Shown here: one piece after another, positions 110 to 64,000 of the stretch
Position numbering within the stretch: position 1 is the first letter of the stretch
Layout of the letters: the number at the start of each line of letters is the position of its first letter
Assembly: GCF_003704095.1 (NCBI RefSeq)
Contig: NW_020845673.1
Coordinates: forward strand, 124,001-188,000
Source of the DNA: Pocillopora damicornis
Lineage: Eukaryota
Reading direction: 5' to 3'
DNA length: 64,000 nucleotides
The notes under the pieces: generated by a model
What the model was told of the DNA's origin: nothing
What the model saw: the letters and a program-made list of their open reading frames with translations, nothing else
Databases searched by the model: none
Made by a program: the position numbers and the translations under genes

Positions 110-414
110 ACCAATGCCGCATGCCTCTTGGTGCAGAAGACGGCCGCTTGGTCCCAGGTTCTTTCTCGGCCTCTACTTACTATAATCATTATCTGGCACC
201 ATGGCACGGTCGCTTAAATCACCGCTGGTCATGGAGCGCACGTTACCGCCGGCACGGCCAATGGATGCAGATTTCTTTTGGAGGAAGTGCAACAGTGAAG
301 GGAATCGCGTCACAAGGCAGACAGGACGCTAACCAATGGGTAACGCAGTACACACTTGGTCGCAGTACAGATGGCATGAAATTTTATCCATACCACGAGG
401 GACGAGGAACAATG
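110..414 (+). CDS. FA58C domain A1, long exon
   Basis: AG/GT, 305 nt; DQCRMPLGAED..YYNHYLAPWHGRLNHRWSWS. Confidence 0.9.
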
Positions 415-3400: not shown

Positions 3401-6400
3401 AGTTTTAACCCTTTACGCCCTAACATTAGGATTCATATTCTCCACACTTTCCCTTTACAAGGAAGATTTTTTTGACAACAAGGAGCTTCTTAAATTGGTG
3501 ATAGTTTCCTTTATTTTTATTACTTTTACATTTGATTCAATTGATAATTCATTAATAATTATTATTAATAATTATTAATTATTAATAATTATCATTAATT
3601 AACATTAATACTTTAAGGAGAAGTTAAAAGCTAGTCACTCTTAGGGGTAAAATGACTGAAGAGGAACAAGCTTTTACATTCATTTGCTTGGTTTGTGAAC
3701 CCTAGGTTGAATTGATCGAAATAGCCTTTTGTTCTTGAAATAAAAAACCATGGTTTTGATCTTTCACTACTTTTCACAGTCTCATTAGTGTCTTCAGGTC
3801 TTTGCTAACGTCAGTCATCTTATTGGTCAAATATATTGTTTATAGATGTTTAGTGGCAATAGTGACAGATACCACGTGGTCCTACATCGCTTTGTAAAAC
3901 CATTCAGGGCACGGTATGTACGACTGCATCCGAAATCCTGGTTCCGGTACATATCTTTGAGAATGGAACTGTACGGCTGTAGACACGGTGAGTGTGGCAA
4001 TTACAGAGAGTTCATTCACCTTTTTACACCCTAACATTAGTATGCATATTCTTCATACTGTTTTCTATACATTCTCTAAAGAGTCGACGAGGAGAATTTG
4101 CTTAACAATCAAGAGCTTCTTTACCGTTTTATCGTTTCCTTTACACCCGTTTGAAAGATTTCCCTCTGGCTTAATTATTGCTGTGTTTGACGCCATTTTC
4201 CACTTTAGGTCCTCTGTGTAACCGACCGATGGGAATGCAGAGTGGTCGTATTCACAACAGCAAAATCACTGCTTCGTCTAATTGGGACCCATTCCATGCC
4301 GCGTTTCGCGCCAGATTGCATCATGGTAAAGCTGGACGCTTCATTGGAGCATGGAGTGCGAAAACTAACAATCGTTATCAATTTCTGCAGGTGAATACTA
4401 AAAAAAAATCATTGTCGATAAATGAAAAGCTTGTTGGAAGTATATGATTCATGGTTGAGTCAAGTAAAACGCTATTTTATCCAATGAATGTTATAAATAC
4501 AAACGTAACTAGCCATGAAGATTGTTCGGTGTTAGCACATATCAGGCTCGCTAAATGCTTCCTGACAATTGTTCCGACGAACGTGGAAGGACATTAAATA
4601 TTTCCTTCCTGGCTTTGCACACAATGTTGTTGCACAAACTCGGCCAATCCGTAAGATAGGGACTAAATTCCACTCATCAAATCGACTCACCCCGAATAAG
4701 CCGGTTATTGGTCAGAGTGACCTATGCAAGAGGCTCTTAGATTGATTGAGTTATTGCCTAGCTTAGTGGGCGCTTGGCTAGAAACAGCGTCATTTTTAAA
4801 AGCGCATGGTTTTTCATTTATTTTTTCCCGCTCATACTGGAACATGCGCCCTCCGTACTCAATCGTTTGGCACGCTGCTTAAGAAGTTATTCAGCTGTTG
4901 GATAAATGTTTTTTTTATTTTAAAATAGGTGGATTTTTCAAGAGCTGCTCTCATCGTCAGAGTCGCAACTCAGGGGCGACAGGACTACAGACAGTGGGTC
5001 ACACAATATTATTTGAGATACTCTTTAGACGGAATTCACTTCGTTGACTACAAGCAACGTCACACTAGAAAGGTAGATATTTATAATCAAAGATCGAGCA
5101 ATTTTCAATTGATTGTCGAAAGTAATCCGCAATTGCTTTGGTTTTGCTTAAATTTGTTCTGCGGGTGGTCTGAGAGTTATTGCACGGGAAAATTTAAAAG
5201 AAGACTTGAAGGATTTAAATCCACGATCCACTCGGTATAAAGCTACTTACATGTCTTGTTAAGGTCTGAAGTTTCTAAAGAAATTCTTTACGAATTGCAG
5301 AAGTCGCTCAGGCGTGTTAACACCCATTAAACTGGATCTTAGCCGAGAACGCGCCTAAATTGCCTTCGGGACGACGTTCTTTTAGTATATCTTTAGGCTA
5401 AGCAGTGATGGTGTCCTGTTCCTAAGTGCCTGATGTGTTATGCCCTTTGTTTGTCTTAGTATTTCCCAGGAAATCGCGATCAGAACACGGTTGTATCACA
5501 CGCGCTGGTACCCAATATAAGAACGAGGATTATCCGTATTGTGCCCTGGCATTGGTATGGGCACATCTCCATGCGAGCAGAGTTTTATGGATGCCTTACA
5601 GGTTTGTTATGAATATGAAAGCGATTTTCGCGGTAATAAACACTTTCAAGCAGTAGAGAAAATCACACAGAGTGTATAACTGAGTATAGAAGTCTGGCTA
5701 CAAGACTGACTTGCTCAGCTACCGAAGCTTATCCCAGTTTCTGTGGCATAGAGTGACTTAGCCTGCAGAATAGGCAGACACGTGCGAGAGGCGTCCGTGA
5801 AAGGCGAGTCACACGCGAGATAGAGAACTTTGATTCTCGTATACGACTCTTTTCCGCACTCACATCTCCTGCTTGTCTAAGCTCTCTCATAAACAATGAA
5901 ATGACTCCCGCAGGCCACGTTACCCATAAGTATTACGTTTATTTTTCTTTACATGTCATTGACACTCATTATGTAACTCGGTCGATCGAGGCTCTGTGGA
6001 ACGCAATGGCCTGATCAGGGTTTGCACTGATTAAGACATGTAGTTGAGACCAAAATTATTTTGCGTGCGGTTTTAAATTAAATCATAAACGCTACTGTCA
6101 CTAGGTCTTGTGAAACAAGACTCACTATGGAGTTCTGAAGCTTTGCAGAAAATTATAGTTTTTGTAAAAGAACAGTCATTCACAGATTACCAATATCGAG
6201 AGACTCATTTTAACTGCATATTTCTTTCGTTCTCTTAAAGATCATTGTAAGATGCCTCTTGGTGTGGAAGACTATCGTATCCCTTCTGGCTCACTTCAAG
6301 CATCATCTTCCTGGAACTACAACCATGGTCCAGACCGCGCGCGAATCAACTTTCCTTCGGGACATAGTCGGTCAGGGGCCTGGGTTGCGAGAGGCAGAAA

Positions 6401-12400: not shown

Positions 12401-13313
12401 TTATTATTTTTATCTTTTGAATAAAAGGACGTTGCTCTCTTCCTCTTGGTTTGGAAGACAAACGTATCACTAATGGCCTTTTATCGGCGTCTACATATTA
12501 CAATCATCATCTGTCCCCTTGGCATGGCCGGTTGAACCACCGCTGGTCATGGAGCGCAAGGACCAACAACCATAACCAGTGGTTCCAAGTGAGTTTCGTG
12601 GGTGTGGTCAGGGCGACAGGGATTGGTACCCAGGGAAGACAGGATGCTAATCAATGGGTGACAAAGTATATTGTGTCCTACAGTCCTGATTCAACCCACT
12701 TCCGCTTTTACTCTGAAGGGAGGGGAACCAAGGTAAGAGTGTGCCTTGTGTGCCACTTTTTTGTTCTAACCAGATTCTTACGTCGTCTTTAATTTATCAC
12801 TGAAAAGTCGCACGATAACATGGAGTCTTTTTGTTAAACGGTTAAACCAGAGTGTAAGGCTTGATGAGTAAGGCAATCTTGCTAATCACCTTAATCACCG
12901 TGATTACTCATCAATCACCTCTTTGAAATTTTACTATTCTAAATCCTGGCAGGTTTTCACCGGAAACAGCAACAGGCACCCGATTGTGTACCATGATTTT
13001 GTTAAACAGTTCAAAGCCGTGTATGTTCGTATTTATCCAAGAAGTTGGTACGGCTGGATGTCTATGAGGACCGAGATATACGGCTGTTATGGTATGTTAG
13101 AGTTTGCGCTTCGAGGGTGTTTGAGAAACTGAGGGACGAAAATGTTTCATTATTAGTCCGGGACTCACCGATTGATTGATTGGTTTATTGAATGACAGAC
13201 AGACAGACAAGAAGACAGACTAATATGTAGATTGGTGATTGATTGATGGACTGATTGGTTGACTGGTTGATGGACTGATTGACTGATTGACTGGTTGATT
13301 GACAGACAGATTA

Positions 13314-13351
<38 letters not shown>

Positions 13352-55300: not shown

Positions 55301-58300
55301 CGTTATACGTTATCTGGTATTCGTTATGTATTACTGAAAACGGGTGAAATAGCTCACTGTGTCTATAATAAGAAGACATAACCAATGTCAGACTTACTTA
55401 CCTCGTATGCTTCGTGGTTACTTTCACGCAGAGATTCCGTGGAAACTATGATATTTACCATACTGTTGCCCAGAGAGTATCACCTTTCATTAGAGCCCGG
55501 TATATAAGGATTCATCCCAAGACTTGGAGGTCATATATTGCCATGAGAGTGGAGTTGTATGGGTGCCGATATAAAGGTAAACATTTGAACACTGCAAACA
55601 CGATTGCTTATGTCTCATCTGGCAAATCAGCAAAAGATACTTTTGTTGACATCCTATTTATTGTAAGAAAACAAAAGCGACTTAATGTTGGAGATGATTC
55701 TAAGACTTAAGATGATTTCTGCTGGTGAAGGTATGAGTTGAATTTGAGGGAGAGAAGAAAAGTAATTAATATAACTCTGAGTAGTTAAACTGTAGGGCTG
55801 CGAAAAGCATGAAGCGATTGAGGTTTTTTTCCTGCTCTAAATCAAGGCTAAGGGAATTCGTCATCTTCTTGACATCTACTTTAACCCTTCAAAATAAGGA
55901 GAAAATGTTTATACATCTCTTTGTTTGTTTCTTTTCGGTTTGCCAGAATATGTATGCGACAGACCTCTAGGTATGCAAAGTGGCCGAATCAAAAATGCAG
56001 CCATCACAGCCTCATCTCAGTGGGACAAAAATCATGCTTCTTGGCTTGCCAGACTTGGGAACATGCGCCGTGGCAGACTGATGGGTGCCTGGTCTGCTAA
56101 GAAGAACAACTACAATCAGTGGATTCAAGTTGATCTGCACAGGTCCATGAAGGTCACTGGTTTGGCTACACAAGGCAGATATGAAGCTGCACAATGGGTG
56201 ACAGCGTTTTACGTTCTCTACAGCGCGGACGGAGTGAAGTTTGCTAAGGTTAAGAATTGGTGGGATGTGGTGAAGGTGAGCGTTAGTTTAAACTATCGTG
56301 TTATTTGTGTTTATTTTTGTGTGTTGGAAAAAGCTTTGGAATTGAAACGAATTCCCCATAAAGTATGCAAGGAAACAATGGACCCCTATGTGAGTTTAGG
56401 TGGAAGGTTAGAACCTTTACGCGACCAATTGCGAAAGTCACGGGGCAAACAATCTCTTTTGTGCGTCATCGCTGTTTCCTCTGTGTCCCAGGATTTTGGG
56501 GTACACAATATATGCACTAAAAGATCTAGTCCAGGCAAAACAATTACGGAGGGTTGGTTTCAAAAGCTTCAGGTGATTTTGTGCCGGAAGTGTGGGACAG
56601 AAATGTAGGCGTGTGATTTTTCAGACTCAAGGTAAAGGTTAGGTGGGTGGCTCATTAACACAGGCATAAGACGCGAGCGGCGACCAAAAGTACAGAGCCT
56701 CACGTCTGAAGCGCTTTGATGCCGAATAAAAAATCGGACATGCCTTGTTTTAGCCTTCTAAACTAAACGTCACATACAAAAGGTTACAGAGAAAAGAACT
56801 CCCAACTTTCGGTCATTGTCCATACATCTAACACTGACGTGTGTGCTTTAACTCCCTCTTGGTCATTAGAAAATCCACAGATGAAACTTCTTTTTTTCGT
56901 CTCGAAATCTACGTGAAGGTACCACTCTATGTCGTTGTAAGGAAAGATGCTCTTATTAATTGATTCCGTGAAAATAATTTTTTTTCATAGACTTTCCCTG
57001 CCAATGTGGACAGATATTCCATACGCAACAATCCTCTGCCGTACCCCATCTATGGACGTTTTGTTCGACTGCAAATGCGCGGCTGGCGATCACACATTTC
57101 AATGAGGCTTGAGTTGTACGGTTGTCCATGGAGTAAGTCTGTTTGCCATGTAGTTTTTGGAAAAACTCTAATCTCTTGTAAATGTTAGATGCTACTCTCT
57201 CCTGTAAATGTTTCGAAAAAGGAATGTGATAAGCAATGATTGGATGAGATTGAGCATGTTATCATGAACTATCAAAACCGGGGTCCAAGTTATCTTCCAA
57301 AGCCGAGGGCTGAGGCAGATAACACAGATACGAGGTGTGATAATTCATGATATCATGCGAAAACCGAATTTAATGATTAGTTAGTAAAGTAAGTCTAATG
57401 CATGATAGTATATTTCATGACAACCGTGTGATAGTGTCTTTCTATAGAGAACTTAGTATGCGTTATGTCTAAATTAAGTTTCTAGAAAAAATAACAGAAC
57501 GCTATATATGCAACTGCCATACTTGACCGTCAACCTTCAGTTATTTTCTATACCAATACGGCCTGCCAAAACTATCTTCAATCCGTGGGGTATCTTCCAA
57601 ATTTCCACTGAATTCGCGTTAACTTCAGATTTTTTCATACACAGATTGTTACTTCTTTTGATTTACTGCTAACACTCTGAATTAACTATATGTTAATCCT
57701 TTTTTTCTTCTTCAGACCGTTGTGATGTACCACTCGGCGTTGAAGATGGTCGCTTCCCCGACCAGCTCATCACTGCTTCCTCATTTTACAACTACTACTG
57801 TGCACCAAGAAACGCCAGGCTCCACCAGAGACGAGTCGGAAGATTTGGAGGAGCTTGGTGCGCAAAAAGAAGCGATAGACGACAGTTCCTTCAGTTCGAC
57901 TTTGGAGGACTTACTCGAGTAACCCGTGTTTCTACCCAAGGTCGTCAAAATTCAGATCAATGGGTCACAAGTTACTATATAACTTTTGGCCGAGATGGTC
58001 AACATTATACACCTTATAGAGAAGGACGCCGTACTAAGGTACACTAGTTTGAATCCTGTATAAAAAGGCATTTTGTTTCGGACTTAAAACCGCCTTAGCT
58101 ATACATTAAAGGTACGACAGAATAAGCAGTGTGCCTGAAGCGCGGGAAAACGCCGCTTGCTAAATGTCAGTTAGTTCTAGATTCGCTTCTGATTGGTTAG
58201 GAGGGTGGCGAAAATTTTTTTTAGACTAATCGCAAAGCAGAGTAATGTAAAGCCAATGCAAACCCGGCATACACCTGATACTTGCTCCTAAATCGCTCAT

Positions 58301-61300
58301 GATATGCAAAATAGTAAGTTTACTTATTGGTGAGAAGCCATTTTCCAAAAGCCTTAGTGACGGTGGCAAATTTGTTTCTCCCCCTGTATAGATATTCGCT
58401 GGCAATTATGACCGATACATGGTTGTCACCAATCGATTCCTGAGGCCACTGTCTGGAAGGTACTTTAGGATTCATCCAGTTACTTGGCGAAGCTGGATTT
58501 CAATGAGAGTGGAATTTTATGGCTGTATTATTGGTAGGTATAAAATAATTATAAATATCTTATAACAAAGATGCTCTGAGAGGAATATATTTTCTGCTTG
58601 AGTTTTCTGATACTTTAATTTTCTTATTTAGTTTTTGCGGTTTTTCTAGGCCTACGTTTTGGAGTTTTTTTTTCTCTCCAGTGTGGTTTAGCCTGCAAAA
58701 ATGCAAATTCAATAGGGGAAAGATAAGACGTTTATATCAACAAAGAGATGAATGAATAAAGAAATTGTATTATACATTTAGTGTTTGTTAAAATGAGAAA
58801 AAAGTTAGAAGAAACTCTTCAAGGTCAAGGAATGAGTGAATTTCGTTGGAATCTGGAAAAACTAAATTTCAGTGGAATACTCGTAGGAAAATGTGAGATT
58901 CGAACTTTTTAAAACATCCATTTCTCTCGGTTTCATTACATTGCTTTCTGTCGCGCTCAAAATTTCTTTCCGCGATTCGTGGAAATTTTGGTCTGTTGTA
59001 AGGGGGGTGCGGAGGGGGGGCTGAACGTTACCACAGTATGTTATATTTTGTCTTTATCTGATTAAGGGCGTTTTTATTTATACCAAGGAAAAGTCAGGAA
59101 AAGAGTAAGAAAACATTTGAAAACAGATGTGTGTATTTGTTTCCTTATTATAATGTAGCAGTCTCCTCATGCCTGAAATTTTCCTCGGTTAGGTCCAAGA
59201 TGCGACAAACCACTCGGTATGCAAAATGGCCGCATTCGGCAAACCCAACTATCAGCCTCTTCGAGCTGGGATGTTAATCATGGTCCTCGCAATGCCCGAC
59301 TAAACTTCCGCCGAACAGGTTCCCGTATGGGAGCCTGGTGTGCCAGGCACAACACCCGCTACCAGTGGCTTGCGGTAGACTTTTATCGAGCCATGCGCGT
59401 GGCGAAGATATCTACGCAAGGTAGACAGGATGCCGCACAGTGGGTCACGCAATACTTTGTAGAGTACAGCCAAGATGGTTCCACGTTCACTGACTACAAG
59501 GAAAATAGCAACCGAAAGGTAATAAACAGATCAGGTTTTATGAAATGTTGTAGGTATCCGTGTGTCTCGGATTAGCTCTGTTGCAGGTGCTGCAAATTGG
59601 AAATGAAGTCTGTGCCTTGTTTTATAGCTGCTAACTAACCCAACCAATCCTCCCATCCAAGAATAAAAAGACTCTCGAGGAAATGAGTCGCCTCATCAAT
59701 TGAGACAAGTTCACCCCGGCCTTTCCCCGTTCGCCCCCAAGTCTTCAACTCGACTCCTTTCGTCAGAGCGATACATAAGTGTGTCGGATTCTTCAGGGAC
59801 AGGTTCTGCCTTAAGGAAACGAGTCAAAAGATTCGGGGAGACCTTGTCGAGATGGAGGCGAACTAGTGTGGTCGAATTTGATACTGTGATATCTTTGATG
59901 AGAATTTTAAAGTTAATGGATTTCTTTTGATTAAACATGCATTGATTTTAGTCAGCCCTTTCCTTATAATTGCAAAATTCTTAACATAAATGCAAAGTTT
60001 TGACTGGTATTGTTACTTTCACAGTACTTTACAGGAAACAGGGATCAAAACAGTGTTGTGCAATATAGTCTGTTTCCACCAATCAAAGCTCGGTTTGTGC
60101 GCATTCGTCCGTGGGGCTGGTACAGACATATTTCTATGAGAGTGGAGTTCTTTGGATGCCCAGAAGGTACATTTGCTTAGACAAGAGAGCTCTGAAAATA
60201 ACTGTCGTAGTCCAAATATCTCTAAGTGATGAGCGCTTTTTACCCAAACGTGCTAAAAGATCAGTTAAATAGTGGCCTATTCAGAAGATTGATTTATCGT
60301 GAATTTTTTGCTCTGACAGAGGGCTGACGCTTAAACAACAACTTTTTAAAGTCCGGTACTTCTGTTTATCTACATGGGACGAATACGTAAATTCTACGCG
60401 ATTAGTACCTTGTTACTTCACTGGCCACCAACATGACACAACTTTTCTCAATTCTTAGAAGACAAGGTTATTATTCGTTTATAATTTTGCTCCAATATTT
60501 ATTAATTTAAAAAATCAGACTTCCATATAGATTAGTTTCTTTAAAGTTCTTTCTTGCAATATAATTTTTTTCTACTTTATTCGACAACTTGGACTGGTAA
60601 CGTTATTGAATTTGAGCCTTCAAAAAAAAAATCTGCTTGCCAGAAGGTTTCTCATTTGGATCATATTTTCCTTCCCCTGAATCCTAGACCCGTGTGGTGT
60701 TCCTCTTGGTTTGGAAGACAAGAGAATCCCAAATGGCCAGTTTTCTGCTTCATCATATTACAACCATCACCTTGCACCGTGGCATGGAAAACTTAATCAC
60801 CGCTGGTCATGGAGTGTTCGATATCGTAACAACAAACAGTGGCTTCAGGTTAATATGGTGGAAATCTACCGTGTGAGAGGCATTGGATCCCAAGGCCGAC
60901 AGGATGCAAACCAATGGGTGAAGACTTACACTGTGTCGTATGGAATGAATGGAGTGGATTTCACTCAGTATAAGGAGAATAGAAGAGTGAAGGTAACCGA
61001 TGACCAATTTTTTTACTTTATATTGGCTTTAAGGGAATGAGAGAGAGTAACTCTGATAGTAGGCCTCTTTCAAATACTCGTGATGATATACTTTTAGAAA
61101 TTTTATCAGTGAACAAATAATTGGCTCTTTTCACTTTATAACTATTTTCCACAAAAAATTGACAATGATGACTCCCGATACGCGTCGATTTTTTTTTTAT
61201 CAAATCAAAACCCACTTAACTACGCTTACAGAGATCTCCAGGAATATTTGAAAGGGTTAAGAGGTCTATGGTCATGTTAGTTTTCGAGATGGTTGCAATG

Positions 61301-64000
61301 AGGTTTCGACGTGGTCTCCGTAACTTTTTTTTTCATAGCTTTATAAGGATTCCAAACGAATCAGCTGATTGCACTCTATGTAACAGTCACATGAGTAATC
61401 GCTTGATACAATTTGACTGTACTCGTTATAATGAGGCCGTGAACAACTTTTTCACGTAATAACATGTGTTTTTGGATTGTTAAAGTTATTCACAGCCAAC
61501 ACAGACCGCCACTCATTGGTGTATCATCGATTCAGAAAGAGACTCCCAGCTGTGTATGTCAGGGTTTACCCTAAGACCTGGTACAGTTGGATATCAATGA
61601 GAATCGAATTGTATGGATGTTCAGGTATTTGAGAAGTTATGGCAGAGTAGAAAACAAATAGAAATCAAGTTTTGAAGCTTTCATCAATAAAAAATTGCTG
61701 TGCACAGCAGTCAGATACACTTTTATCAGTTTTCTTTTTCTTTTTTTTTTCCTTTGTTTATTTGTTTTGCAATTGCACGTATAAGAAAACCCGTTTACCG
61801 TGAGCCTATCGCTAAGCTATGAACCCCTCCCTCCTTACGGGGACTTACTAGATTTCAGGCTTGCCAGGAGTGGGGGTGCATGCACTTTTAGATAGGGAGG
61901 GGGTGTAAAAAAGGGGCGAATTTTCAATTCTTTAAATTTTCTTCGTTATTGTTTGTTGTTGTTTTTTCCAAAATGTTTATATTTTCGCAAATTTTTATTT
62001 TGATACAGCTGCTGTTTGTAACAAAGCCTTGGGTATGAAGAGTGGTGCTATCAGGAATAAGCAAATCACAGCTTCTTCAGAGTGGGACAAATACCACAAT
62101 GCCAGACTGTCTAGGCTGGGGACAGTCAAACGGGGTCGGTACAGGGGGGCCTGGAGCGCACGCCACAACAATCACCATCAGTGGCTTAAAGTGGACTTTA
62201 GACGACCGATGAAAATCAAGAAAATAGTCACAAAAGGTCGACAGGATACCAACCAATGGGTAACAAGATACCAAGTGACGTACAGTCAAGATGGAACACA
62301 CTGGACCATGTACAGATACAAGAGTAACGATGTGGTACGTATTATCAGCGGCACTTATTGAAAGAAAATATCGTATTACAAGGTTTACTCTGTCAACTAA
62401 ATCAATACAGGACTATTTTGTCGTTTCATCGCCTGAGTTAAAAGTTAAATAAGAAATTTGCTATTTGGGATTATTGTGAATCGTAATCATGGAAACAGAA
62501 AAAATTGGAAAGGAATTAGGACGAAAGTACTGAGTCTACCGAGGAAAAATTTTCCCAAATGCGTCTGTTTTAAGCACTGTTAAAAATGGGAAATCATTTT
62601 TAACCCACGTCTTCATTTCTCATGACACTTCCTTCAGTATTCTTCCTACGTTTTAAGGAAAAGCGCGGAAGGCATTGCGAAGGCTTTTCTTATAAATAAT
62701 CCGATTCATGAAGCGTTTGGAACTTTTAAACAAAACAAGCTTAAAAGTAACCCTTGACATTTCATGTGATATTTATAATGCATGTGCCATTTAAACTGTT
62801 ATTTATTGGTTGCATCTTACAGTACTTCCAAGGAAACCGAGACCAACACAGTCTCGTATGTAATGTACTTAACCCACCAGTGATCGCTCGTTTTATGCGC
62901 ATCATTCCACGAGGATGGTATCGGCACATCAGTATGAGGATAGAGTTCTATGGATGCAAAGCAGGTAAAAGAGAGAAGAAAAAGATGGTATCGAAGCTGT
63001 TGCGCATAGGTTATATGACATTAGGTCGTGTTGTATTGGGATCAATGGCTTAACGTTGGGTTGGCCTATTGAATTCACACCTCTTTTATTTGGAAAAAAA
63101 CCGTTCTAAGTTTAACCGGTTGATCAAAGTTTTCAAACGAGATTAAATAGGGTTCAAACGGTTGAAAATCTGAGAGTCTGATCACTCTTTCACAATTTAT
63201 TCCCATTATCAAAATTTTCTTAATTTTCTATTTTCCTATTAATCACTTGTTATGCTTTCATTTTTCGCCTCACCTATAACTGTAGACAAGTGCGAAGCGC
63301 CGCTCGGAATCCAAGATGGCCGCATAACGCAATCTATGATGTCTGCGTCCACGTTCTACAACCGATATTATGGTCCATGGTCTGCCAGACTGCAGGCTCG
63401 GAATCACGGTGCAACCCGTGGCGGCTGGATAGCTAGGATTAACAACAATCGACAATGGCTGCAGATCGACCTCGGAGCCAAATCTGTCGTTAAGAAGATT
63501 GCCACTCAAGGCAGATACGATGCTAATCAATGGGTTACTAGTTACACGCTTTCGATCAGTAACAATGCTGTCAGGTTTTATCCTTACAAGGAAAATAGGC
63601 GCACTAGGGTAAGTACACCACCTTTTTGTTTGTTTGTTTGTTTGTTAGTTTGGAGAACTACGTCGAATTAGTCAAAGACGATAATTGCAATCCTTACATT
63701 GACTTAACGTTTCCTTTGCCTCCGGCTCGTGATTTACCAACTTTTTTCGTGGGCTAATACGCTACTATTAACCCACGCTAGTAAACCAATGAAAAGTGTG
63801 CTCTGTTACTTTTTCTAAAATTTACCACAATTTTTAGTGGGTTTACCGGTGCAATTAACGAAACGTTTTTGGCGTTAATCGTACAAACAGGTGCTCTTGG
63901 TATTTCAGTCTTTACATAAAATTGGATAAGTACTGTTTATTAGACTTAAAATATTAATTTTTTACTGTCTCTCCTATCCTGTCCATATCAAAACAGATCT
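110..64000 (+). CDS. Giant multi-exon tandem F5/8 type C (discoidin/FA58C) protein, internal part only: at least 43 domains, about 6,600 aa, octamer super-repeat (A-H)n
   Basis: 86 exons bounded by AG/GT with consistent phases (long exons 3n+2, short exons 3n+1); FA58C motifs CxxPLG..TASS..ARL..GAW..QWLQVD..ATQGR..QWVTxY / FxGNxD..RxxPxxW..ISMRVExYGC; next short exon begins at 63997. Confidence 0.93.
784..966. mobile_element. MITE-like repeat family 2 (TTAA-flanked)
   Basis: TTAATCCTTTAACTCCC..CAATACCAAATTCTC..GAGATCTTGAGAGTTAAAG; related copies at about 2628-2831, 25040-25207, 47256-47440. Confidence 0.6.
1064..1205 (+). CDS. FA58C domain A1, short exon
   Basis: 142 nt; MFRGNMNR..EVYGCST. 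Confidence 0.9.
1714..2018 (+). CDS. FA58C domain B1, long exon
   Basis: 305 nt; GLCNGVLGLQNG..QAWCARY. Confidence 0.9.
2290..2431 (+). CDS. FA58C domain B1, short exon
   Basis: 142 nt; YFPGSRD..ICMRVEFYGCPA. Confidence 0.9.
2628..2831. mobile_element. MITE-like repeat family 2
   Basis: Shares AAGCA(G/A)ACAA..TTAGT..CAATACC core with 784-966; ends AAAAGGTTAA. Confidence 0.6.
2966..3288 (+). CDS. FA58C domain C1, long exon
   Basis: 323 nt; DRCFVPLGMQDG..ARLQARNYGSTRGGW. Confidence 0.9.
3405..3652. mobile_element. MITE-like repeat family 1 (TTAACCCTTT..AAAGGGTTAA type) with internal AT-rich expansion
   Basis: TTAACCCTTTACGCCCTAACATT..CATATTCTCC..GAGCTTCT..TAAGGAGAA..TAGTCACTCTTAGGGG. Confidence 0.65.
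3846..3987 (+). CDS. FA58C domain C1, short exon
   Basis: 142 nt; MFSGNSDR..ELYGCRH. Confidence 0.9.
4209..4390 (+). CDS. FA58C domain D1, long exon 5' part (split by an extra intron)
   Basis: 182 nt; GPLCNRPMG..YQFLQ|gt. Confidence 0.88.
4929..5072 (+). CDS. FA58C domain D1, long exon 3' part
   Basis: 144 nt; VDFSRAA..HTRK; 182+144=326 as in other D exons. Confidence 0.88.
5460..5601 (+). CDS. FA58C domain D1, short exon
   Basis: 142 nt; YFPGNRDQN..EFYGCLT. Confidence 0.9.
6241..6563 (+). CDS. FA58C domain E1, long exon
   Basis: 323 nt; DHCKMPLGVED..NYNHGPDR. Confidence 0.9.
7192..7339 (+). CDS. FA58C domain E1, short exon
   Basis: 148 nt; VFSGNFDR..EVFGCYYGG. Confidence 0.9.
7775..8103 (+). 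CDS. FA58C domain F1, long exon
   Basis: 329 nt; ARFCTNPVG..KHWWNYVK. Confidence 0.9.
8520..8723. mobile_element. MITE-like repeat family 1
   Basis: CCTAACATCAGTATGCATATTCTCCATAC..AGTCACTCT..AAAGAGTTAA. Confidence 0.7.
8886..9027 (+). CDS. FA58C domain F1, short exon
   Basis: 142 nt; QFPGNYDR..ELYGCPW. Confidence 0.9.
9590..9912 (+). CDS. FA58C domain G1, long exon
   Basis: 323 nt; SHCDMPLGLEDG..RRRYSRFGGGW. Confidence 0.9.
10091..10232 (+). CDS. FA58C domain G1, short exon
   Basis: 142 nt; IFRGNNDR..EFYGCVY. Confidence 0.9.
10749..11074 (+). CDS. FA58C domain H1, long exon
   Basis: 326 nt; GKRCNQPLG..RRVGHRVGAWCARHN. Confidence 0.9.
11448..11658. mobile_element. MITE-like repeat family 1
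   Basis: Same core; ends AAAGGGTTAA. Confidence 0.7.
11717..11858 (+). CDS. FA58C domain H1, short exon
   Basis: 142 nt; YLTGNRDQN..ELYGCST. Confidence 0.9.
11995..12105. repeat. Short palindromic element
   Basis: TACCCCTCCCCTAACCC..GGGGTAGGGAAGGGGTA inverted arms. Confidence 0.55.
12428..12732 (+). CDS. FA58C domain A2, long exon
   Basis: 305 nt; GRCSLPLGLED. Confidence 0.9.
12953..13091 (+). CDS. FA58C domain A2, short exon
   Basis: 139 nt; VFTGNSNR..EIYGCY. Confidence 0.9.
13170..13340. repeat. Compound tetranucleotide microsatellite (GATT/GACT/GACA)n
   Basis: Directly visible. Confidence 0.95.
13755..14071 (+). CDS. FA58C domain B2, long exon
   Basis: 317 nt; VFSCSSPLVRKLP. Confidence 0.87.
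14548..14689 (+). CDS. FA58C domain B2, short exon
   Basis: 142 nt; YFQGNRDRN..EFYGCRA. Confidence 0.9.
14985..15307 (+). CDS. FA58C domain C2, long exon
   Basis: 323 nt; DPCDVPLGMEDG. Confidence 0.9.
15408..15549 (+). CDS. FA58C domain C2, short exon
   Basis: 142 nt; VFQGNIER..ELYGCRL. Confidence 0.9.
15635..15817. mobile_element. TA-flanked MITE with about 30-bp terminal inverted repeats (Tc1/mariner-type geometry)
   Basis: TA|TGTCAGAAATGCATGCAATAACGAAAATG..CATTTTCGTTACAGCATGCATTTCTGGACG|TA. Confidence 0.7.
16092..16417 (+). CDS. FA58C domain D2, long exon
   Basis: 326 nt; GPLCNRPMGLQSG. Confidence 0.9.
16703..16844 (+). CDS. FA58C domain D2, short exon
   Basis: 142 nt; YFSGNHDRN..EFYGCRI. 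Confidence 0.9.
17296..17618 (+). CDS. FA58C domain E2, long exon
   Basis: 323 nt; DRFTMPLG (N-terminal Cys replaced by Phe). Confidence 0.9.
18214..18358 (+). CDS. FA58C domain E2, short exon
   Basis: 145 nt; MFRGNYD..ELYGGRLR. Confidence 0.9.
18450..18781 (+). CDS. FA58C domain F2, long exon
   Basis: 332 nt; ENFCDAPVG..YWWSYAPR. Confidence 0.9.
19364..19505 (+). CDS. FA58C domain F2, short exon
   Basis: 142 nt; TFQGNRDQ..ELYGSPW. Confidence 0.9.
19615..19813. mobile_element. MITE-like repeat family 1
   Basis: TTAACCCT..AAAGGGTTAA terminal inverted repeats with shared core. Confidence 0.7.
20095..20417 (+). CDS. FA58C domain G2, long exon
   Basis: 323 nt; RCDMPLGIED. Confidence 0.9.
20817..20958 (+). 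CDS. FA58C domain G2, short exon
   Basis: 142 nt; IFLGNYDQ..ELYGCVV. Confidence 0.9.
21364..21689 (+). CDS. FA58C domain H2, long exon
   Basis: 326 nt; GARCNRPLG. Confidence 0.9.
21932..22029 (-). pseudogene. Degenerate intron-containing tRNA-Met (elongator-type) pseudogene
   Basis: Reverse complement GCCTTGTTAGCACAATAGGCAGCAGCGCATCAGTCTCAAG-[insert]-AATTTAAAGGTCGTGGGTACGATCCTCAAATGGGGCA follows the eukaryotic tRNA-Met(CAU) layout as recalled (GCCTCGTTAGCGCAGTAGG..CAGTCTCATAATCTGAAGGTCGTGAGTTCGATCCTCACACGGGGCA); anticodon and T-loop mutated. Confidence 0.7.
22138..22279 (+). CDS. FA58C domain H2, short exon
   Basis: 142 nt; YFQGNRDQN..EFYGCAE. Confidence 0.9.
22728..23032 (+). CDS. FA58C domain A3, long exon
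   Basis: 305 nt; DRFVMPLG (N-terminal Cys replaced by Phe). Confidence 0.9.
23564..23702 (+). CDS. FA58C domain A3, short exon
   Basis: 139 nt; VFSGNTNR..EVYGAS. Confidence 0.9.
23810..23940. repeat. Imperfect palindrome
   Basis: ATCGTAGAA..GATTTATCGTACAC / GTGAACGATAAATC..TTCTACGAT. Confidence 0.6.
24002..24327 (+). CDS. FA58C domain B3, long exon
   Basis: 326 nt; ASPCNKPLG. Confidence 0.9.
24802..24943 (+). CDS. FA58C domain B3, short exon
   Basis: 142 nt; LFQANRDQN..EYYGCVA. Confidence 0.9.
25357..25679 (+). CDS. FA58C domain C3, long exon
   Basis: 323 nt; DRCDVPLGVRDG. Confidence 0.9.
26303..26444 (+). CDS. FA58C domain C3, short exon
   Basis: 142 nt; IFQGNTER..ELYGCRL. Confidence 0.9.
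27179..27504 (+). CDS. FA58C domain D3, long exon
   Basis: 326 nt; GVLCNRPMG. Confidence 0.9.
28181..28322 (+). CDS. FA58C domain D3, short exon
   Basis: 142 nt; YFTGNRDQN..EFYGCFT. Confidence 0.9.
28422..28744 (+). CDS. FA58C domain E3, long exon
   Basis: 323 nt; DRCVMPLG. Confidence 0.9.
28774..28985. mobile_element. MITE-like repeat family 1
   Basis: ATCAGTATGCATATTCT..TTATTCTCGTGACCTTAATGTTTGATTCAG core. Confidence 0.65.
29136..29280 (+). CDS. FA58C domain E3, short exon
   Basis: 145 nt; VFRGNYD..ELYGCRLR. Confidence 0.9.
29546..29874 (+). CDS. FA58C domain F3, long exon
   Basis: 329 nt; ERFCDSPLG. Confidence 0.9.
30270..30411 (+). CDS. FA58C domain F3, short exon
   Basis: 142 nt; TFQGNRDR..ELYGAPW. 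Confidence 0.9.
30741..31063 (+). CDS. FA58C domain G3, long exon
   Basis: 323 nt; RCDMPLGVEDG. Confidence 0.9.
31492..31633 (+). CDS. FA58C domain G3, short exon
   Basis: 142 nt; IFQGNYDR..EFYGCVV. Confidence 0.9.
31732..32057 (+). CDS. FA58C domain H3, long exon
   Basis: 326 nt; GPKCDKPLG. Confidence 0.9.
32263..32535. repeat. Two-copy direct repeat, about 138-bp period
   Basis: TGTTGA(A/G)GTCAAATCCTGCGATTATCAT..ATTGGCTAAGAGCT..AGCAGTTATCTA at 32263 and 32401. Confidence 0.85.
32670..33794 (-). CDS. Intronless rhodopsin-family (class A) GPCR, peptide-receptor-like, nested in host intron (paralogue 1, 374 aa from first ATG)
   Basis: Seven hydrophobic segments; TM1 GN, TM2 NMAVSDL, TM3 CK..IAIDRF, TM4 STW, TM5 VPLF..Y, TM7 INPVIC, C-tail LCCCF; ORF track starts at a TTG (33839), first ATG at 33794. 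Confidence 0.9.
   Translation of the reverse strand: MQGLNETTHDHQQMNCSYQELSASEDNFKLITYCFLLLGSLFGNIFIIIIVYKNQDLHKTVNYFIVNMAVSDLVFPLVWLPVEIVAKANNSTWWRWYLSGTFGSITCKFIIFVSQVSFLVSSQSFVWIAIDRFFAVVFPVRLGFISKKIRMIAIASTWSLAAAFCFTYLLSLDLRKEGNHACCKHTTFVSINQKYFTIYLWFQTTLLYFVPLFISTLLYAAITSALHKQSKSLANSGPRIQRNIFEKRKRAIRLSVVTMVTYFLSVSPAMLVRLHFSRVLPLSCTMIEVLRVTADVCHYASTVINPVICLSFVQSYRRGLRNILCCCFRKQRDETAQQGQITQKEIITPSGANYRNRRNCKVSANNEETLDTTL
34745..34843 (-). pseudogene. Remnant of a third GPCR paralogue (C-terminal tail only)
   Basis: Translates as LCSCCSKRSNEKAKLERIT-(frameshift)-GMKNFSRDNDR, aligning with LCYCFRTRRDETGKREQKTPTEMKSSSTANCR of paralogue 2. Confidence 0.55.
35420..36553 (-). CDS. Intronless rhodopsin-family (class A) GPCR, nested in host intron (paralogue 2, 377 aa from first ATG)
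   Basis: Same motifs (GN, NMAVSDL, IAIDRF, STW, INPVIC); clear paralogue of 32670-33794; first ATG at 36553. Confidence 0.9.
   Translation of the reverse strand: MPLQGLNETEHDHQQTNCSYQELPAAVDNFKLCMYCFLLLGSLFGNIFIIIIVYKHRDLQKTVNYFIVNMAVSDLVFPLALLPLEIVSMATGSTLTRWYVDGIFGSITCKSIHFVAQVSPAVSSQSFVWIAIDRFVAILFPVRLGLVSRKIRVIAIASTWILAAAINSNHLVSQDLHIRDNKTFCEVKLVSAITEETYFAISYYMQLFLNTFGSFFLSAVLYTAIAVSLHKQSKALANSGPNIQRNVFKKRKRAIQLSAVTMVTYYLTVTIPMLSYLQHRKVFRFPCNVMKVVSFMGDLCQYASTVINPVICLSFVHSYRQGLRNILCYCFRTRRDETGKREQKTPTEMKSSSTANCRNRRNCKVSANNDEILDTAL
38201..38342 (+). CDS. FA58C domain H3, short exon (after 6,143-nt intron)
   Basis: 142 nt; YFTGNRDQN..EFYGCTE. Confidence 0.9.
38575..38755 (-). mobile_element. 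Possible remnant of a Penelope-like retroelement terminus
   Basis: Reverse strand ..CTTCCGCTCTGATTGTCGAAACGTCAGTCAC..ACAACAGTCCTA resembles termini I recall from this class; no ORF. Confidence 0.35.
38810..39114 (+). CDS. FA58C domain A4, long exon
   Basis: 305 nt; DRCAMPLG. Confidence 0.9.
39124..39338. mobile_element. MITE-like repeat family 1 (diverged)
   Basis: TTAACCCTGTACACTCTAACATTAGTATG..; further decayed copies at about 4015-4145, 22296-22442, 31105-31275, 34915-35103. Confidence 0.55.
39527..39665 (+). CDS. FA58C domain A4, short exon
   Basis: 139 nt; IFTANTDR..EFYGCS. Confidence 0.9.
40256..40581 (+). CDS. FA58C domain B4, long exon
   Basis: 326 nt; ASLCNRALG..GAWCPKH. Confidence 0.9.
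40880..41021 (+). CDS. FA58C domain B4, short exon
   Basis: 142 nt; LFQANRDQN..PCLRAEFYGCPV. Confidence 0.9.
41379..41701 (+). CDS. FA58C domain C4, long exon
   Basis: 323 nt; DRCDVPLGIQDG. Confidence 0.9.
41930..42071 (+). CDS. FA58C domain C4, short exon
   Basis: 142 nt; LFQANTER..ELYGCRL. Confidence 0.9.
42524..42849 (+). CDS. FA58C domain D4, long exon
   Basis: 326 nt; GHLCNRPMG. Confidence 0.9.
43238..43471. repeat. 28-bp minisatellite, about 8 copies
   Basis: Consensus CGAACGAACGGAAGCTCGGTAATACTTC, head to tail, no spacers. Confidence 0.9.
43522..43663 (+). CDS. FA58C domain D4, short exon
   Basis: 142 nt; YFTGNRDQN..EFYGCLT. Confidence 0.9.
43762..44084 (+). CDS. FA58C domain E4, long exon
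   Basis: 323 nt; DKCTMPLG. Confidence 0.9.
44615..44759 (+). CDS. FA58C domain E4, short exon
   Basis: 145 nt; LFRGNYD..ELYGCRYK. Confidence 0.9.
45151..45479 (+). CDS. FA58C domain F4, long exon
   Basis: 329 nt; ERFCDRIQG. Confidence 0.9.
45963..46104 (+). CDS. FA58C domain F4, short exon
   Basis: 142 nt; TFRGNYDR..EVYGGAW. Confidence 0.9.
46607..46929 (+). CDS. FA58C domain G4, long exon
   Basis: 323 nt; SKCDVPLG; exon starts with GTAAGT. Confidence 0.87.
47594..47735 (+). CDS. FA58C domain G4, short exon
   Basis: 142 nt; IFPGNFDR..ELYGCVI. Confidence 0.9.
48400..48725 (+). CDS. FA58C domain H4, long exon
   Basis: 326 nt; GPRCDKPLG. Confidence 0.9.
49111..49252 (+). CDS. FA58C domain H4, short exon
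   Basis: 142 nt; YFTGNRDQN..EFYGCVE. Confidence 0.9.
49566..49870 (+). CDS. FA58C domain A5, long exon
   Basis: 305 nt; DRCNIPLG. Confidence 0.9.
50180..50467. mobile_element. MITE-like dispersed repeat (family 3)
   Basis: Ends TTTTCAATAGGGTGTCGAAA..TTTACGACACTCAATCGAAA form imperfect inverted repeats; related pieces near 5095-5165, 53115-53260, 58130-58300. Confidence 0.55.
50534..50672 (+). CDS. FA58C domain A5, short exon
   Basis: 139 nt; VFSGNSDR..ELFGCT. Confidence 0.9.
50928..51253 (+). CDS. FA58C domain B5, long exon
   Basis: 326 nt; SALCSTPLG. Confidence 0.9.
51713..51854 (+). CDS. FA58C domain B5, short exon
   Basis: 142 nt; TFRGNNDQN..EIYGCKA. Confidence 0.9.
51978..52300 (+). 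CDS. FA58C domain C5, long exon
   Basis: 323 nt; DPCDVPLG. Confidence 0.9.
52908..53049 (+). CDS. FA58C domain C5, short exon
   Basis: 142 nt; IFQANIER..ELYGCRL. Confidence 0.9.
53507..53832 (+). CDS. FA58C domain D5, long exon
   Basis: 326 nt; GRMCNQPMG. Confidence 0.9.
54212..54353 (+). CDS. FA58C domain D5, short exon
   Basis: 142 nt; YFTGNRDRN..EFYGCFT. Confidence 0.9.
54714..55036 (+). CDS. FA58C domain E5, long exon
   Basis: 323 nt; DRCTMPLG. Confidence 0.9.
55432..55576 (+). CDS. FA58C domain E5, short exon
   Basis: 145 nt; RFRGNYD..ELYGCRYK. Confidence 0.9.
55947..56275 (+). CDS. FA58C domain F5, long exon
   Basis: 329 nt; EYVCDRPLG. Confidence 0.9.
56991..57132 (+). CDS. FA58C domain F5, short exon
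   Basis: 142 nt; TFPANVDR..ELYGCPW. Confidence 0.9.
57716..58038 (+). CDS. FA58C domain G5, long exon (correct frame missed by the ORF track)
   Basis: 323 nt; RCDVPLGVEDG..YYCAPRNARLHQRRVGRFGGAWCAK. Confidence 0.9.
58392..58533 (+). CDS. FA58C domain G5, short exon
   Basis: 142 nt; IFAGNYDR..EFYGCII. Confidence 0.9.
59193..59518 (+). CDS. FA58C domain H5, long exon
   Basis: 326 nt; GPRCDKPLG. Confidence 0.9.
60025..60166 (+). CDS. FA58C domain H5, short exon
   Basis: 142 nt; YFTGNRDQN..EFFGCPE. Confidence 0.9.
60688..60992 (+). CDS. FA58C domain A6, long exon
   Basis: 305 nt; DPCGVPLG. Confidence 0.9.
61486..61624 (+). CDS. FA58C domain A6, short exon
   Basis: 139 nt; LFTANTDR..ELYGCS. 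Confidence 0.9.
62009..62334 (+). CDS. FA58C domain B6, long exon
   Basis: 326 nt; AAVCNKALG. Confidence 0.9.
62823..62964 (+). CDS. FA58C domain B6, short exon
   Basis: 142 nt; YFQGNRDQH..EFYGCKA. Confidence 0.9.
63286..63608 (+). CDS. FA58C domain C6, long exon
   Basis: 323 nt; DKCEAPLG. Confidence 0.9.

What the first reader, a model, noticed from the sequence alone, without database searches (positions are those of the whole stretch)
110..63608. Strict eight-domain super-repeat (A-H)x5 + ABC with position-specific spike loops
Seen: each position has its own loop signature, recurring every 8 domains without a skip. A YYNHHLSPWHGRLNHRWSWS; B ARLGRLG.VKRG.YVGAW; C MYNHYYGPWSARLQARN.G..RGGW; D ..NNRYQ..ERNS.K; E YNYNHGPDR.RLNI..G.GRTGAW; F APWLARLH..WW.(Y/V)VK; G RRYGR(Y/F)GGAW..QGRQNS; H WD.NH..RR.G.R.GAWCARHN. 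Exon lengths are mostly position-specific too (A 305/139, E 323/145, F 329/142). Units start at 110, 12428, 22728, 38810, 49566 and 60688, about 1,239 aa each. Known: these loops form the ligand face (lipid, glycan, collagen) of discoidin domains. Inference: eight distinct binding surfaces held in fixed register, like titin or nebulin super-repeats.
Basis: partly seen in the sequence, partly recalled or inferred. Interest (0 to 1): 0.9.

Follow-up and report, generated by a model that had tools for sequence, protein, structure and literature searches.

The report
Giant coral protein, eight-domain super-repeat
A stony-coral gene encodes a huge secreted, strongly positively charged protein made almost only of discoidin domains, arranged as eight distinct domain types repeated in strict order. 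The same eight-type order is found in a sea anemone, so this titin-like design outside the cell is roughly half a billion years old, and I found no description of it.

Summary

**Gene model.** The + strand holds 43 discoidin (F5/8 type C) domains on 86 GT-AG exons. They splice into 6,599 codons without a stop. RNA contigs confirm all 9 introns tested.

**Super-repeat.** A maximum-likelihood tree gives exactly eight clades by position (support 93-100). A deeper split separates odd from even positions (100/100). Identity between domains peaks at shifts of 8, 16 and 24.

**Full array.** On the contig the array is one leading domain, then A-H seven times, then A-F: 63 domains behind a signal peptide and a small N-terminal domain (both seen in an anemone orthologue).

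**Age.** Nematostella has the same A-H order at least seven times. Its first and last units pair with the coral's. A second coral matches unit for unit. Synonymous sites are saturated and dN/dS is about 0.1.

**Loops and chemistry.** Position-specific residues are concentrated in the ligand-binding spike loops. The protein has pI 10.6 and almost no N-glycosylation sites (1 seen, 42 expected).

**Open.** Ligands, three-dimensional shape and the 3' end of the gene are unknown. I found no prior description. It is a new variant of a known kind (super-repeat proteins; discoidin arrays such as sea-urchin nectin).

The parts
110..11858 (+). Super-repeat unit 1 (domains A1-H1), 17 exons
   Evidence: Exons: A1 110-414, 1064-1205; B1 1714-2018, 2290-2431; C1 2966-3288, 3846-3987; D1 4209-4390, 4929-5072, 5460-5601; E1 6241-6563, 7192-7339; F1 7775-8103, 8886-9027; G1 9590-9912, 10091-10232; H1 10749-11074, 11717-11858. 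This is the most divergent unit within each type clade. Its A-D block pairs with Nematostella unit 1.
4391..4928 (+). Extra phase-0 intron inside the first exon of D1
   Evidence: The two pieces are 182 + 144 = 326 nt, the usual length of a D first exon. Both ends are GT-AG.
12428..22279 (+). Super-repeat unit 2 (A2-H2), 16 exons
   Evidence: Exons: A2 12428-12732, 12953-13091; B2 13755-14071, 14548-14689; C2 14985-15307, 15408-15549; D2 16092-16417, 16703-16844; E2 17296-17618, 18214-18358; F2 18450-18781, 19364-19505; G2 20095-20417, 20817-20958; H2 21364-21689, 22138-22279. The nine introns from A2 to E2 are seen as GT..AG joints in RNA contigs from three studies. E2 has lost both conserved cysteines, as has its counterpart in the second coral.
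22728..38342 (+). Super-repeat unit 3 (A3-H3), 16 exons; H3 is split by a 6.1-kb intron
   Evidence: Exons: A3 22728-23032, 23564-23702; B3 24002-24327, 24802-24943; C3 25357-25679, 26303-26444; D3 27179-27504, 28181-28322; E3 28422-28744, 29136-29280; F3 29546-29874, 30270-30411; G3 30741-31063, 31492-31633; H3 31732-32057, 38201-38342. A3-D3 are sisters of A4-D4. E3, G3 and H3 are sisters of E2, G2 and H2.
38810..49252 (+). Super-repeat unit 4 (A4-H4), 16 exons
   Evidence: Exons: A4 38810-39114, 39527-39665; B4 40256-40581, 40880-41021; C4 41379-41701, 41930-42071; D4 42524-42849, 43522-43663; E4 43762-44084, 44615-44759; F4 45151-45479, 45963-46104; G4 46607-46929, 47594-47735; H4 48400-48725, 49111-49252.
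49566..60166 (+). Super-repeat unit 5 (A5-H5), 16 exons
   Evidence: Exons: A5 49566-49870, 50534-50672; B5 50928-51253, 51713-51854; C5 51978-52300, 52908-53049; D5 53507-53832, 54212-54353; E5 54714-55036, 55432-55576; F5 55947-56275, 56991-57132; G5 57716-58038, 58392-58533; H5 59193-59518, 60025-60166.
60688..63608 (+). Start of super-repeat unit 6 (A6, B6, first exon of C6); the unit continues past the window end
   Evidence: Exons: A6 60688-60992, 61486-61624; B6 62009-62334, 62823-62964; C6 63286-63608. The second exon of C6, then D6-H6, unit 7 and A8-F8 follow on the contig up to position 214617 of G000:C2308.

Best explanation
The window lies inside one very large gene of a pocilloporid stony coral. 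The genome has 234 Mb in 4,393 contigs, so it is probably Pocillopora damicornis; that identification is inference.

**Architecture.** The product is a secreted protein. It has a signal peptide and a roughly 170-residue N-terminal domain, then one leading discoidin domain, then eight distinct discoidin domain types A-H repeated seven times, then A-F. That makes 63 domains, joined by linkers of only 4-5 residues between the closing cysteine of one domain and the opening cysteine of the next.

**Origin.** The array grew from a two-domain (odd/even) ancestor into an eight-domain unit, and then multiplied by in-register unequal crossing-over. This happened before sea anemones and stony corals separated. 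Edge units have stayed orthologous since then. Inner units turned over early and have been fixed within stony corals.

**Selection.** Purifying selection keeps each type's own spike-loop face, the strong positive charge and a surface almost free of N-glycosylation sites.

**Most likely working (inferred, not shown).** It is a long multivalent extracellular scaffold or adhesive. It presents eight different aromatic and basic binding faces in a repeating pattern to polyanionic partners such as sulfated glycans, acidic lipids or other acidic polymers of matrix, mucus or capsules.
For: **Shown**
- Gene model without stops.
- All 9 tested introns, and the continuations H1 to A2 and E2 to F2, appear in poly-A and oligo-dT RNA contigs from 3 studies.
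- Pfam F5/8 type C matches above the cut-off, from first exons alone.
- Eight position clades plus an odd/even split at 100/100.
- Periodicity at 8, 16 and 24 domains.
- The array extends over contig positions 122342-214617 in strict register. Type models rank A-H in order for units 6, 7 and A8-F8. A-type domains occur nowhere else in the genome.
- Nematostella DS469515.1 320-408 kb has a leading domain, then A-H at least seven times, then A.
- Clades A, C, E and G each hold both species at 96-100 support.
- Block trees pair coral unit 1 with anemone unit 1 (91/98), and coral unit 7 with anemone units 6/7 (92/97 for A-D, 99/99 for E-H).
- Scaffolds of a second coral pair one-to-one with units 1 and 2.
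- dS is saturated and dN/dS is about 0.1.
- Spike columns: within-type identity 0.62 against between-type 0.31. The rest of the domain: 0.65 against 0.48. Permutation p < 1e-4. The pattern also holds across species, p = 3e-4.
- Exaiptasia XP_020911456 starts with a signal peptide and an N-terminal domain that is 71% identical to contig 120346-120822, followed by an even-type domain, then A, B and C.
- pI 10.6, Arg 11.8%, net charge +13 to +19 per domain.
- N-X-S/T sites: 1 against 41.9 +/- 6 expected in the coral, 1 against 62 +/- 7 in the anemone, 0 against 10 in the second coral.
- Single modelled domains superpose on factor VIII C2 and neuropilin b1 at TM 0.9, rmsd 1.6-1.8 A.
Against: - No full-length transcript was seen. 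The RNA evidence covers 6 kb.
- The signal peptide is read from an orthologue, not from this genome.
- The 3' end is open. A VWD/EGF stretch, 12 further discoidin domains without the A-H pattern, a proline-rich stretch and a VWA domain follow on the same strand, and may or may not belong to the gene.
- No ligand, cell type or localisation is known.
- The even types D and H are not cleanly separated in the anemone.
- A cyclic order is what block duplication produces by itself, so order alone does not prove a functional register. The latest block duplication (E2-D3 to E3-D4) is out of the A-H frame.
- Spike positions were assigned by alignment to factor V/VIII, not from a structure of this protein.
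Confidence: 0.7

Rival explanations
1. The period is a historical by-product. Unequal crossing-over between similar domains copies blocks of eight, so a cyclic order arises and persists without any function of the register. The domains are useful one by one, for example as a broad lectin or adhesive array, and their order and number do not matter.
For: - Inner units cluster by lineage, as expected from turnover by unequal crossing-over.
- The latest duplication is shifted by four domains relative to A-H.
- The array starts with an extra domain and ends with a partial unit, A-F.
- Other coral discoidin genes show repeats kept nearly identical by ongoing homogenisation.
Against: - The number of units is about the same in coral (7.75) and anemone (at least 7).
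- The first and last units are orthologous across that split.
- Units are one-to-one between two coral genera.
- No domain has been lost, gained or swapped in 62 consecutive positions.
- Type-specific loops are under long-term purifying selection.
Confidence: 0.2
2. Each eight-domain unit folds into a closed ring, a single-chain version of the retinoschisin octamer. The protein is then a string of about seven cog-wheels rather than a rod.
For: - The period is eight.
- Linkers are 4-5 residues long.
- In the discoidin fold both chain ends lie at the pole opposite the spikes. This is established knowledge of solved C2 domains, not tested here.
- Retinoschisin is among the sequence-related solved structures.
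Against: - Nothing structural supports it. The tools give no coordinates, and the 4-domain model has pTM 0.49.
- Two-domain superpositions on known tandems are poor: rmsd 6-18 A.
- The array is not a whole number of units: one leading domain and a final A-F.
- The block duplication is out of frame by four.
Confidence: 0.07
3. The stretch holds several adjacent genes or alternative transcripts, not one giant protein. This is how public annotations of the orthologous loci present it.
For: - Nematostella and Exaiptasia database models are short fragments of 150-800 residues.
- No protein longer than about 7,400 residues appeared in the profile search.
- Only 6 kb was checked with RNA.
Against: - Every exon fits phase 1/0/1 across 86 exons with no stop and no internal signal peptide.
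- RNA contigs run across the H1-A2 unit boundary and up to five exons in one piece.
- The old fragment models mix exons of different domains.
- The only signal peptide found in orthologues is at the 5' end.
Confidence: 0.08

Closest known systems
Sea-urchin nectin (Pl-nectin, Paracentrotus lividus, UniProt Q70JA0)
   Same: It is the closest named protein in the profile search, at about 104 bits per domain. It is a secreted matrix protein made of tandem discoidin domains only. It also lacks N-glycosylation sites (0 against 8.3 expected).
   Different: It has six domains, not 63 or more. It is acidic (pI 6.0 against 10.6). Its domains do not sort into types A-H and it has no super-repeat. It is from a deuterostome, and orthology is not shown.
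C1-C2 pair of coagulation factors V and VIII, lactadherin C1-C2, neuropilin b1-b2
   Same: Same domain family and fold. Tandem spacing is the same: two consecutive domains of the anemone orthologue align to these pairs in one stretch without a gap at the linker. Binding is through spike loops carrying aromatic and basic residues; that is established knowledge of these proteins.
   Different: They have two domains, combined with other domain types. They bind known ligands such as phosphatidylserine membranes or VEGF and semaphorin. The predicted arrangement between domains does not superpose (rmsd 6-18 A).
Super-repeats of titin (7- and 11-domain) and nebulin (7-module)
   Same: A giant protein with a fixed cyclic order of distinct module types. 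Same-position modules are more alike than neighbours, and the types are conserved between distant species.
   Different: Those are intracellular muscle proteins with other folds (Ig/Fn3, nebulin repeats), and their period is known to match a filament. Here the protein is extracellular, the fold is discoidin and no periodic partner is known.
Retinoschisin octamer
   Same: Discoidin fold, and the number eight.
   Different: It is a homo-oligomer of eight identical one-domain chains joined by disulfides. Here there are eight different domains on one chain, and no ring has been shown.
Other coral poly-discoidin genes (Pocillopora verrucosa XP_066029356, Acropora millepora LOC114977630)
   Same: They are the best-scoring database proteins, with 8-12 tandem discoidin domains, and are also poor in N-glycosylation sites.
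   Different: They combine EGF modules with one domain type repeated nearly identically (ongoing homogenisation). Their pI is near neutral (7.2-8.5). They are different loci.

Membership tests
F5/8 type C (discoidin) domain, Pfam PF00754 | Profile match above Pfam's gathering score | tested here: met
   First exons alone score 42.7 and 70.2 bits against a cut-off of 28.2. Second exons match profile positions 86-127.
F5/8 type C (discoidin) domain, Pfam PF00754 | Beta-sandwich fold of solved C2 and b1 domains | tested here: met
   Model of the Exaiptasia orthologue fragment: domain pLDDT 85-97; TM 0.90-0.91 and rmsd 1.6-1.8 A to factor VIII C2 and neuropilin-2 b1. This was tested on the orthologue because a spliced coral domain has no reference to hand in.
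F5/8 type C (discoidin) domain, Pfam PF00754 | Cysteine near each end of the domain (closing disulfide) | tested here: met
   37 of 42 complete domains keep both. E2 and A3 lost both together. F2, F3 and F4 lost the last one.
Super-repeat architecture (titin/nebulin kind) | Distinct module types in a fixed cyclic order without a skip | tested here: met
   43 of 43 domains in the window and 62 consecutive positions on the contig.
Super-repeat architecture (titin/nebulin kind) | Same-position modules more alike than neighbours | tested here: met
   64.5% against 40-48% identity. Peaks at shifts of 8, 16 and 24 domains.
Super-repeat architecture (titin/nebulin kind) | Module types conserved between distant species | tested here: met
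   Same order in Nematostella and in a second coral. D and H are only weakly separated in the anemone.
Super-repeat architecture (titin/nebulin kind) | Period matched to a periodic binding partner | not testable with these tools
   No partner is known. This needs binding and imaging experiments.
Sea-urchin nectin family | Six-domain architecture and orthology | tested here: not met
   63 or more domains here. Nectin domains score about equally on several type models.
Retinoschisin-like octameric ring | Eight discoidin domains closed into a ring | not testable with these tools
The 4-domain model has pTM 0.49.

The most novel reading that the evidence does not exclude
The protein is an extracellular molecular ruler or template. 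Its eight different cationic, aromatic spike faces, repeated about every 30 nm along a glycan-free chain, dock onto a periodic polyanionic structure of anthozoans and set its spacing. That structure could be matrix fibrils, mucus polymers or capsule contents. This would be the first extracellular counterpart of titin or nebulin, dating from before the coral-anemone split. The 30 nm figure is my estimate from about 4 nm per domain.
Probability: 0.2. Interest if true: 0.9.

Novelty: new variant of a known kind. Interest (0 to 1): 0.78.

Why it matters
Super-repeats, in which module types keep their identity by position, are textbook features of the muscle giants titin and nebulin, where they measure out filaments. 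Here the same logic appears in a secreted protein built from a lectin and lipid-binding fold. It has been kept for roughly half a billion years in animals without muscle sarcomeres of that kind.

The pattern is hard to explain without a precise function. It combines 62 positions in unbroken order, edge units orthologous between anemone and coral, type-specific binding loops, extreme positive charge and near-total avoidance of N-glycosylation sites.

The protein is invisible in current annotations, which break it into fragments. Nematostella is genetically tractable, so the question is directly testable by knock-out, localisation and binding arrays with eight recombinant domains.

It also gives a clean natural example of how tandem arrays evolve: stable edges, early turnover inside, and block duplications out of frame.

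Tried and rejected
**Joined sequence.** The joined (spliced) protein was never sent to any search or folding tool. Exons were searched one by one by reference. Joining was done only inside scripts, for trees and statistics. As a result there is no fold of a coral domain or of a whole A-H unit.

**Profile search.** A profile of 24 first exons was run against 1.84 billion proteins. It found no giant orthologue. The best hits are other genes. Very long proteins may be missing from the library, so the blank says little.

**Length limit.** The search for homologous proteins cannot see proteins outside 0.55-1.75 times the query length. The search with the N-terminal domain found only two orthologue fragments, plus many bacterial proteins that share that domain.

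**N-terminal domain.** The local Pfam copy has no match for it.

**Intermediate four-domain period.** Rejected. Identity at a shift of 4 is 0.491, against 0.481 at a shift of 2. Sister pairs of types differ between trees.

**Geometry between domains.** Inconclusive from AlphaFold plus Foldseek.

**Literature.** Four searches and the supplements of the Nematostella matrisome paper PMC12549020 gave no description of this gene or of a discoidin super-repeat. That paper lists several 'coagulation factor-like' proteins that I could not map to the locus.

**Assembly gaps.** They were left as they are. Domain G7 is partial because of one.

**Odd RNA joint.** One non-canonical joint (14683 to 17304, one run, short side, 14 foreign letters) was taken as a contig chimera between similar repeats.

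Full report
**What is in the window**

A search of all six frames with two seed peptides found 43 first-exon and 42 second-exon pieces of a discoidin domain. All are on the + strand and they alternate strictly. Scoring of splice sites gave one consistent pattern. Each first exon is entered in phase 1 and left in phase 0. Each second exon is left in phase 1. Every intron is GT-AG.

The joined model has 86 exons, 19,799 nt and 6,599 codons without a stop. D1 carries one extra intron but keeps the usual length. Pfam places the exons in F5/8 type C: first exons match profile positions 1-82 and second exons 86-127. The nearest solved structures are the C domains of factors V and VIII, neuropilin b1/b2, lactadherin and retinoschisin.

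The joined protein was used only inside scripts. No search or folding tool received it.

**The super-repeat**

A careful maximum-likelihood tree of the 43 domains puts each of the eight positions in one clade (support 93-100). It needs the minimum of 7 label changes, against 30.9 for shuffled labels.

Same-position identity averages 64.5%. Other positions of the same parity average 48%, and the other parity 40.5%. Identity between domain i and domain i+k is 0.675, 0.644 and 0.615 at k = 8, 16 and 24. It is 0.48-0.49 at other even k and 0.40-0.41 at odd k.

So a two-domain period lies beneath the eight-domain one. The tree splits A, C, E and G from B, D, F and H at 100/100. No four-domain stage is visible.

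**Extent of the gene**

The window is G000:C2308:124001-188000. The flanks hold one more domain upstream and 31 downstream on the same strand, 75 in all. Trees and type-specific profiles read the series as follows:
- a leading even-type domain;
- A1-H6;
- a more divergent unit 7;
- A8-F8.

That is 62 positions in unbroken register. Domains of type A occur nowhere else in the genome.

After F8 come a VWD piece and an EGF module, then 12 discoidin domains without the A-H pattern, a proline-rich stretch and a VWA domain. Whether these belong to the same gene is open.

Upstream, contig 120346-120822 and 122047-122220 encode a domain that is 71% identical to residues 22-142 of Exaiptasia XP_020911456. 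That protein begins with a signal peptide and continues with an even-type domain, then A, B and C. So the coral gene starts near contig position 120.3 kb, and the protein is very probably secreted.

**Expression**

Contigs from four RNA runs (three studies; poly-A, oligo-dT and random priming) were laid on window 12401-18400. They show all nine predicted introns as GT..AG joints, including the unusual acceptor of the shortened B2 exon. One contig spans five exons. Loose ends continue into the last exon of H1 and the first exon of F2.

**Age**

Between same-position domains, synonymous sites are saturated. Most dS values cannot be computed, and the closest pairs give 0.5-1.5. dN/dS is about 0.1.

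Old Nematostella gene models turned out to be fragments of the orthologue. Three loci from scaffold DS469515.1 were classified with profiles built only from the coral. They read: one leading domain, then A-H at least seven times, then A, with one 8-kb stretch unseen.

In a joint tree the clades A, C, E and G each contain coral and anemone domains (96-100). B and F nearly do. D and H of the anemone are unresolved.

Trees of concatenated A-D and E-H blocks give more detail:
- Coral unit 1 pairs with anemone unit 1 (91/98).
- Coral unit 7 pairs with anemone units 6/7 (92/97 and 99/99).
- Inner units group by lineage.

Two Tara Pacific metagenome scaffolds carry E-H, A-H and A. Their exons are about 83% identical to the window and their introns do not align, so they are not Pocillopora. 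Their amino-acid distance is far smaller than to the anemone, so they come from a stony coral, possibly Porites; that is inference. Their domains pair one-to-one with coral units 1 and 2. They share the loss of both cysteines in E2.

Two conclusions follow. The eight types, and at least the first and last units, existed before anemones and stony corals split, which published clocks put at roughly half a billion years ago (my knowledge, not tested here). The whole array has been frozen within stony corals.

Sister pairs A3-D3/A4-D4 and E2, G2, H2/E3, G3, H3 show that the last block duplication copied eight domains starting at E, not at A.

**Loops and chemistry**

I took spike columns from the alignment to factor V/VIII C2. 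In the spikes, within-type identity (0.62) is as high as in the rest of the domain (0.65). Between-type identity is much lower: 0.31 against 0.48. The excess of type-specific signal in the spikes beats all 10,000 random column sets. It also holds for coral-anemone pairs (p = 3e-4).

Type features that survive in the anemone include the six-residue deletion in spike 2 of A and the loop motifs of C, E and G.

The 6,557 residues in the window have pI 10.6 and 11.8% arginine. Each domain carries a net charge of +13 to +19, and the spikes are rich in aromatic residues and histidine.

N-X-S/T sites are almost absent:

| Source | Seen | Expected |
|---|---|---|
| Coral (window) | 1 | 41.9 +/- 6 |
| Anemone | 1 | 62 +/- 7 |
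| Second coral | 0 | 10 |

Such avoidance makes sense only for a protein that passes through the secretory pathway and must stay free of N-glycans.

Linkers between the last cysteine of one domain and the first of the next are mostly 4-5 residues.

**Structure**

A model of the Exaiptasia fragment gave confident discoidin domains (pLDDT 85-97; TM 0.9 to factor VIII C2). The N-terminal domain was poor and overall pTM was 0.49. Two-domain superpositions on neuropilin b1b2 or factor VIII C1-C2 are loose. The spatial arrangement of the chain is therefore unknown.

**Reading**

The shown parts are architecture, expression, age, selection and chemistry. The function is inferred: a long multivalent extracellular scaffold or adhesive that presents eight different cationic, aromatic faces in a repeating pattern to polyanionic partners.

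The main rival is that the period is only the footprint of block duplication. The frozen unit number, the orthologous edges and the conserved type-specific loops speak against it, but only experiments can decide.

Four literature searches and one supplement search found no description of this gene or of a discoidin super-repeat. The closest named relative is sea-urchin nectin, with six domains.

Noticed in passing
window 32670-33839 (-) and 35420-36598 (-): Two intact antisense ORFs of 389 and 392 residues lie inside the 6.1-kb intron that splits domain H3. Both match rhodopsin-family 7TM receptors (Pfam 7tm_1, 114.5 and 99.6 bits). They are nested genes on the opposite strand.
   Followed up: partly
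window 2622-2822: An interspersed repeat of about 200 bp in the intron between B1 and C1. It has at least 40 copies at 78-83% identity on many contigs of the genome. It is probably a short non-autonomous mobile element.
   Followed up: no
L009:6346-6822 and L009:8047-8220 (contig 120346-122220, upstream of the window): The N-terminal domain of the gene has no match in the local Pfam copy. It is 50-57% identical to domains in many bacterial proteins (planctomycete 'membrane-bound dehydrogenase-like' proteins and PASTA-domain proteins) and to repeated domains in two Stylophora proteins. Precomputed labels are PF26817 and PF23500. That is unusually high identity between animals and bacteria.
   Followed up: partly
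L013:533-733, L013:2195-2908, L015:718-1840 (contig 218.5-239.8 kb): A VWD piece and an EGF module lie between domains 62 and 63. Twelve further discoidin domains without the A-H pattern follow, then a proline-rich stretch and a VWA domain, all on the same strand. This may be the C-terminal part of the same gene or a neighbouring gene.
   Followed up: partly
proteins P0001 (Pocillopora verrucosa) and P0003 (Acropora millepora): Other coral genes carry 8-12 discoidin domains that are nearly identical to each other, next to EGF modules. This is the opposite mode of array evolution: ongoing homogenisation. They too are depleted in N-glycosylation sites.
   Followed up: partly
window 17296-18358 (E2), 22728-23702 (A3), and the last exons of F2, F3 and F4: E2 and A3 have each lost both conserved cysteines together. 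F2, F3 and F4 lost only the closing one. The double loss in E2 is shared with the second coral.
   Followed up: yes
window 14683 to 17304: One RNA contig of run X3 joins the second exon of B2 to the first exon of E2, with GC..TC ends and 14 foreign letters between. It is most likely an assembly chimera between similar repeats. Exon skipping is not excluded.
   Followed up: no
contigs C2019, C847, C4228, C3136, C698, C4317 and C2136 of G000: Many further clusters of discoidin first exons (36-51% identical to A2) lie in tandem on other contigs. The genome is rich in discoidin arrays.
   Followed up: no
L018, L021, L022 (Nematostella) and contig 198-237 kb: Extra introns inside first exons are common in the anemone and in the coral's distal units, at several different positions. 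The intron between first and second exon is always at the same place.
   Followed up: no
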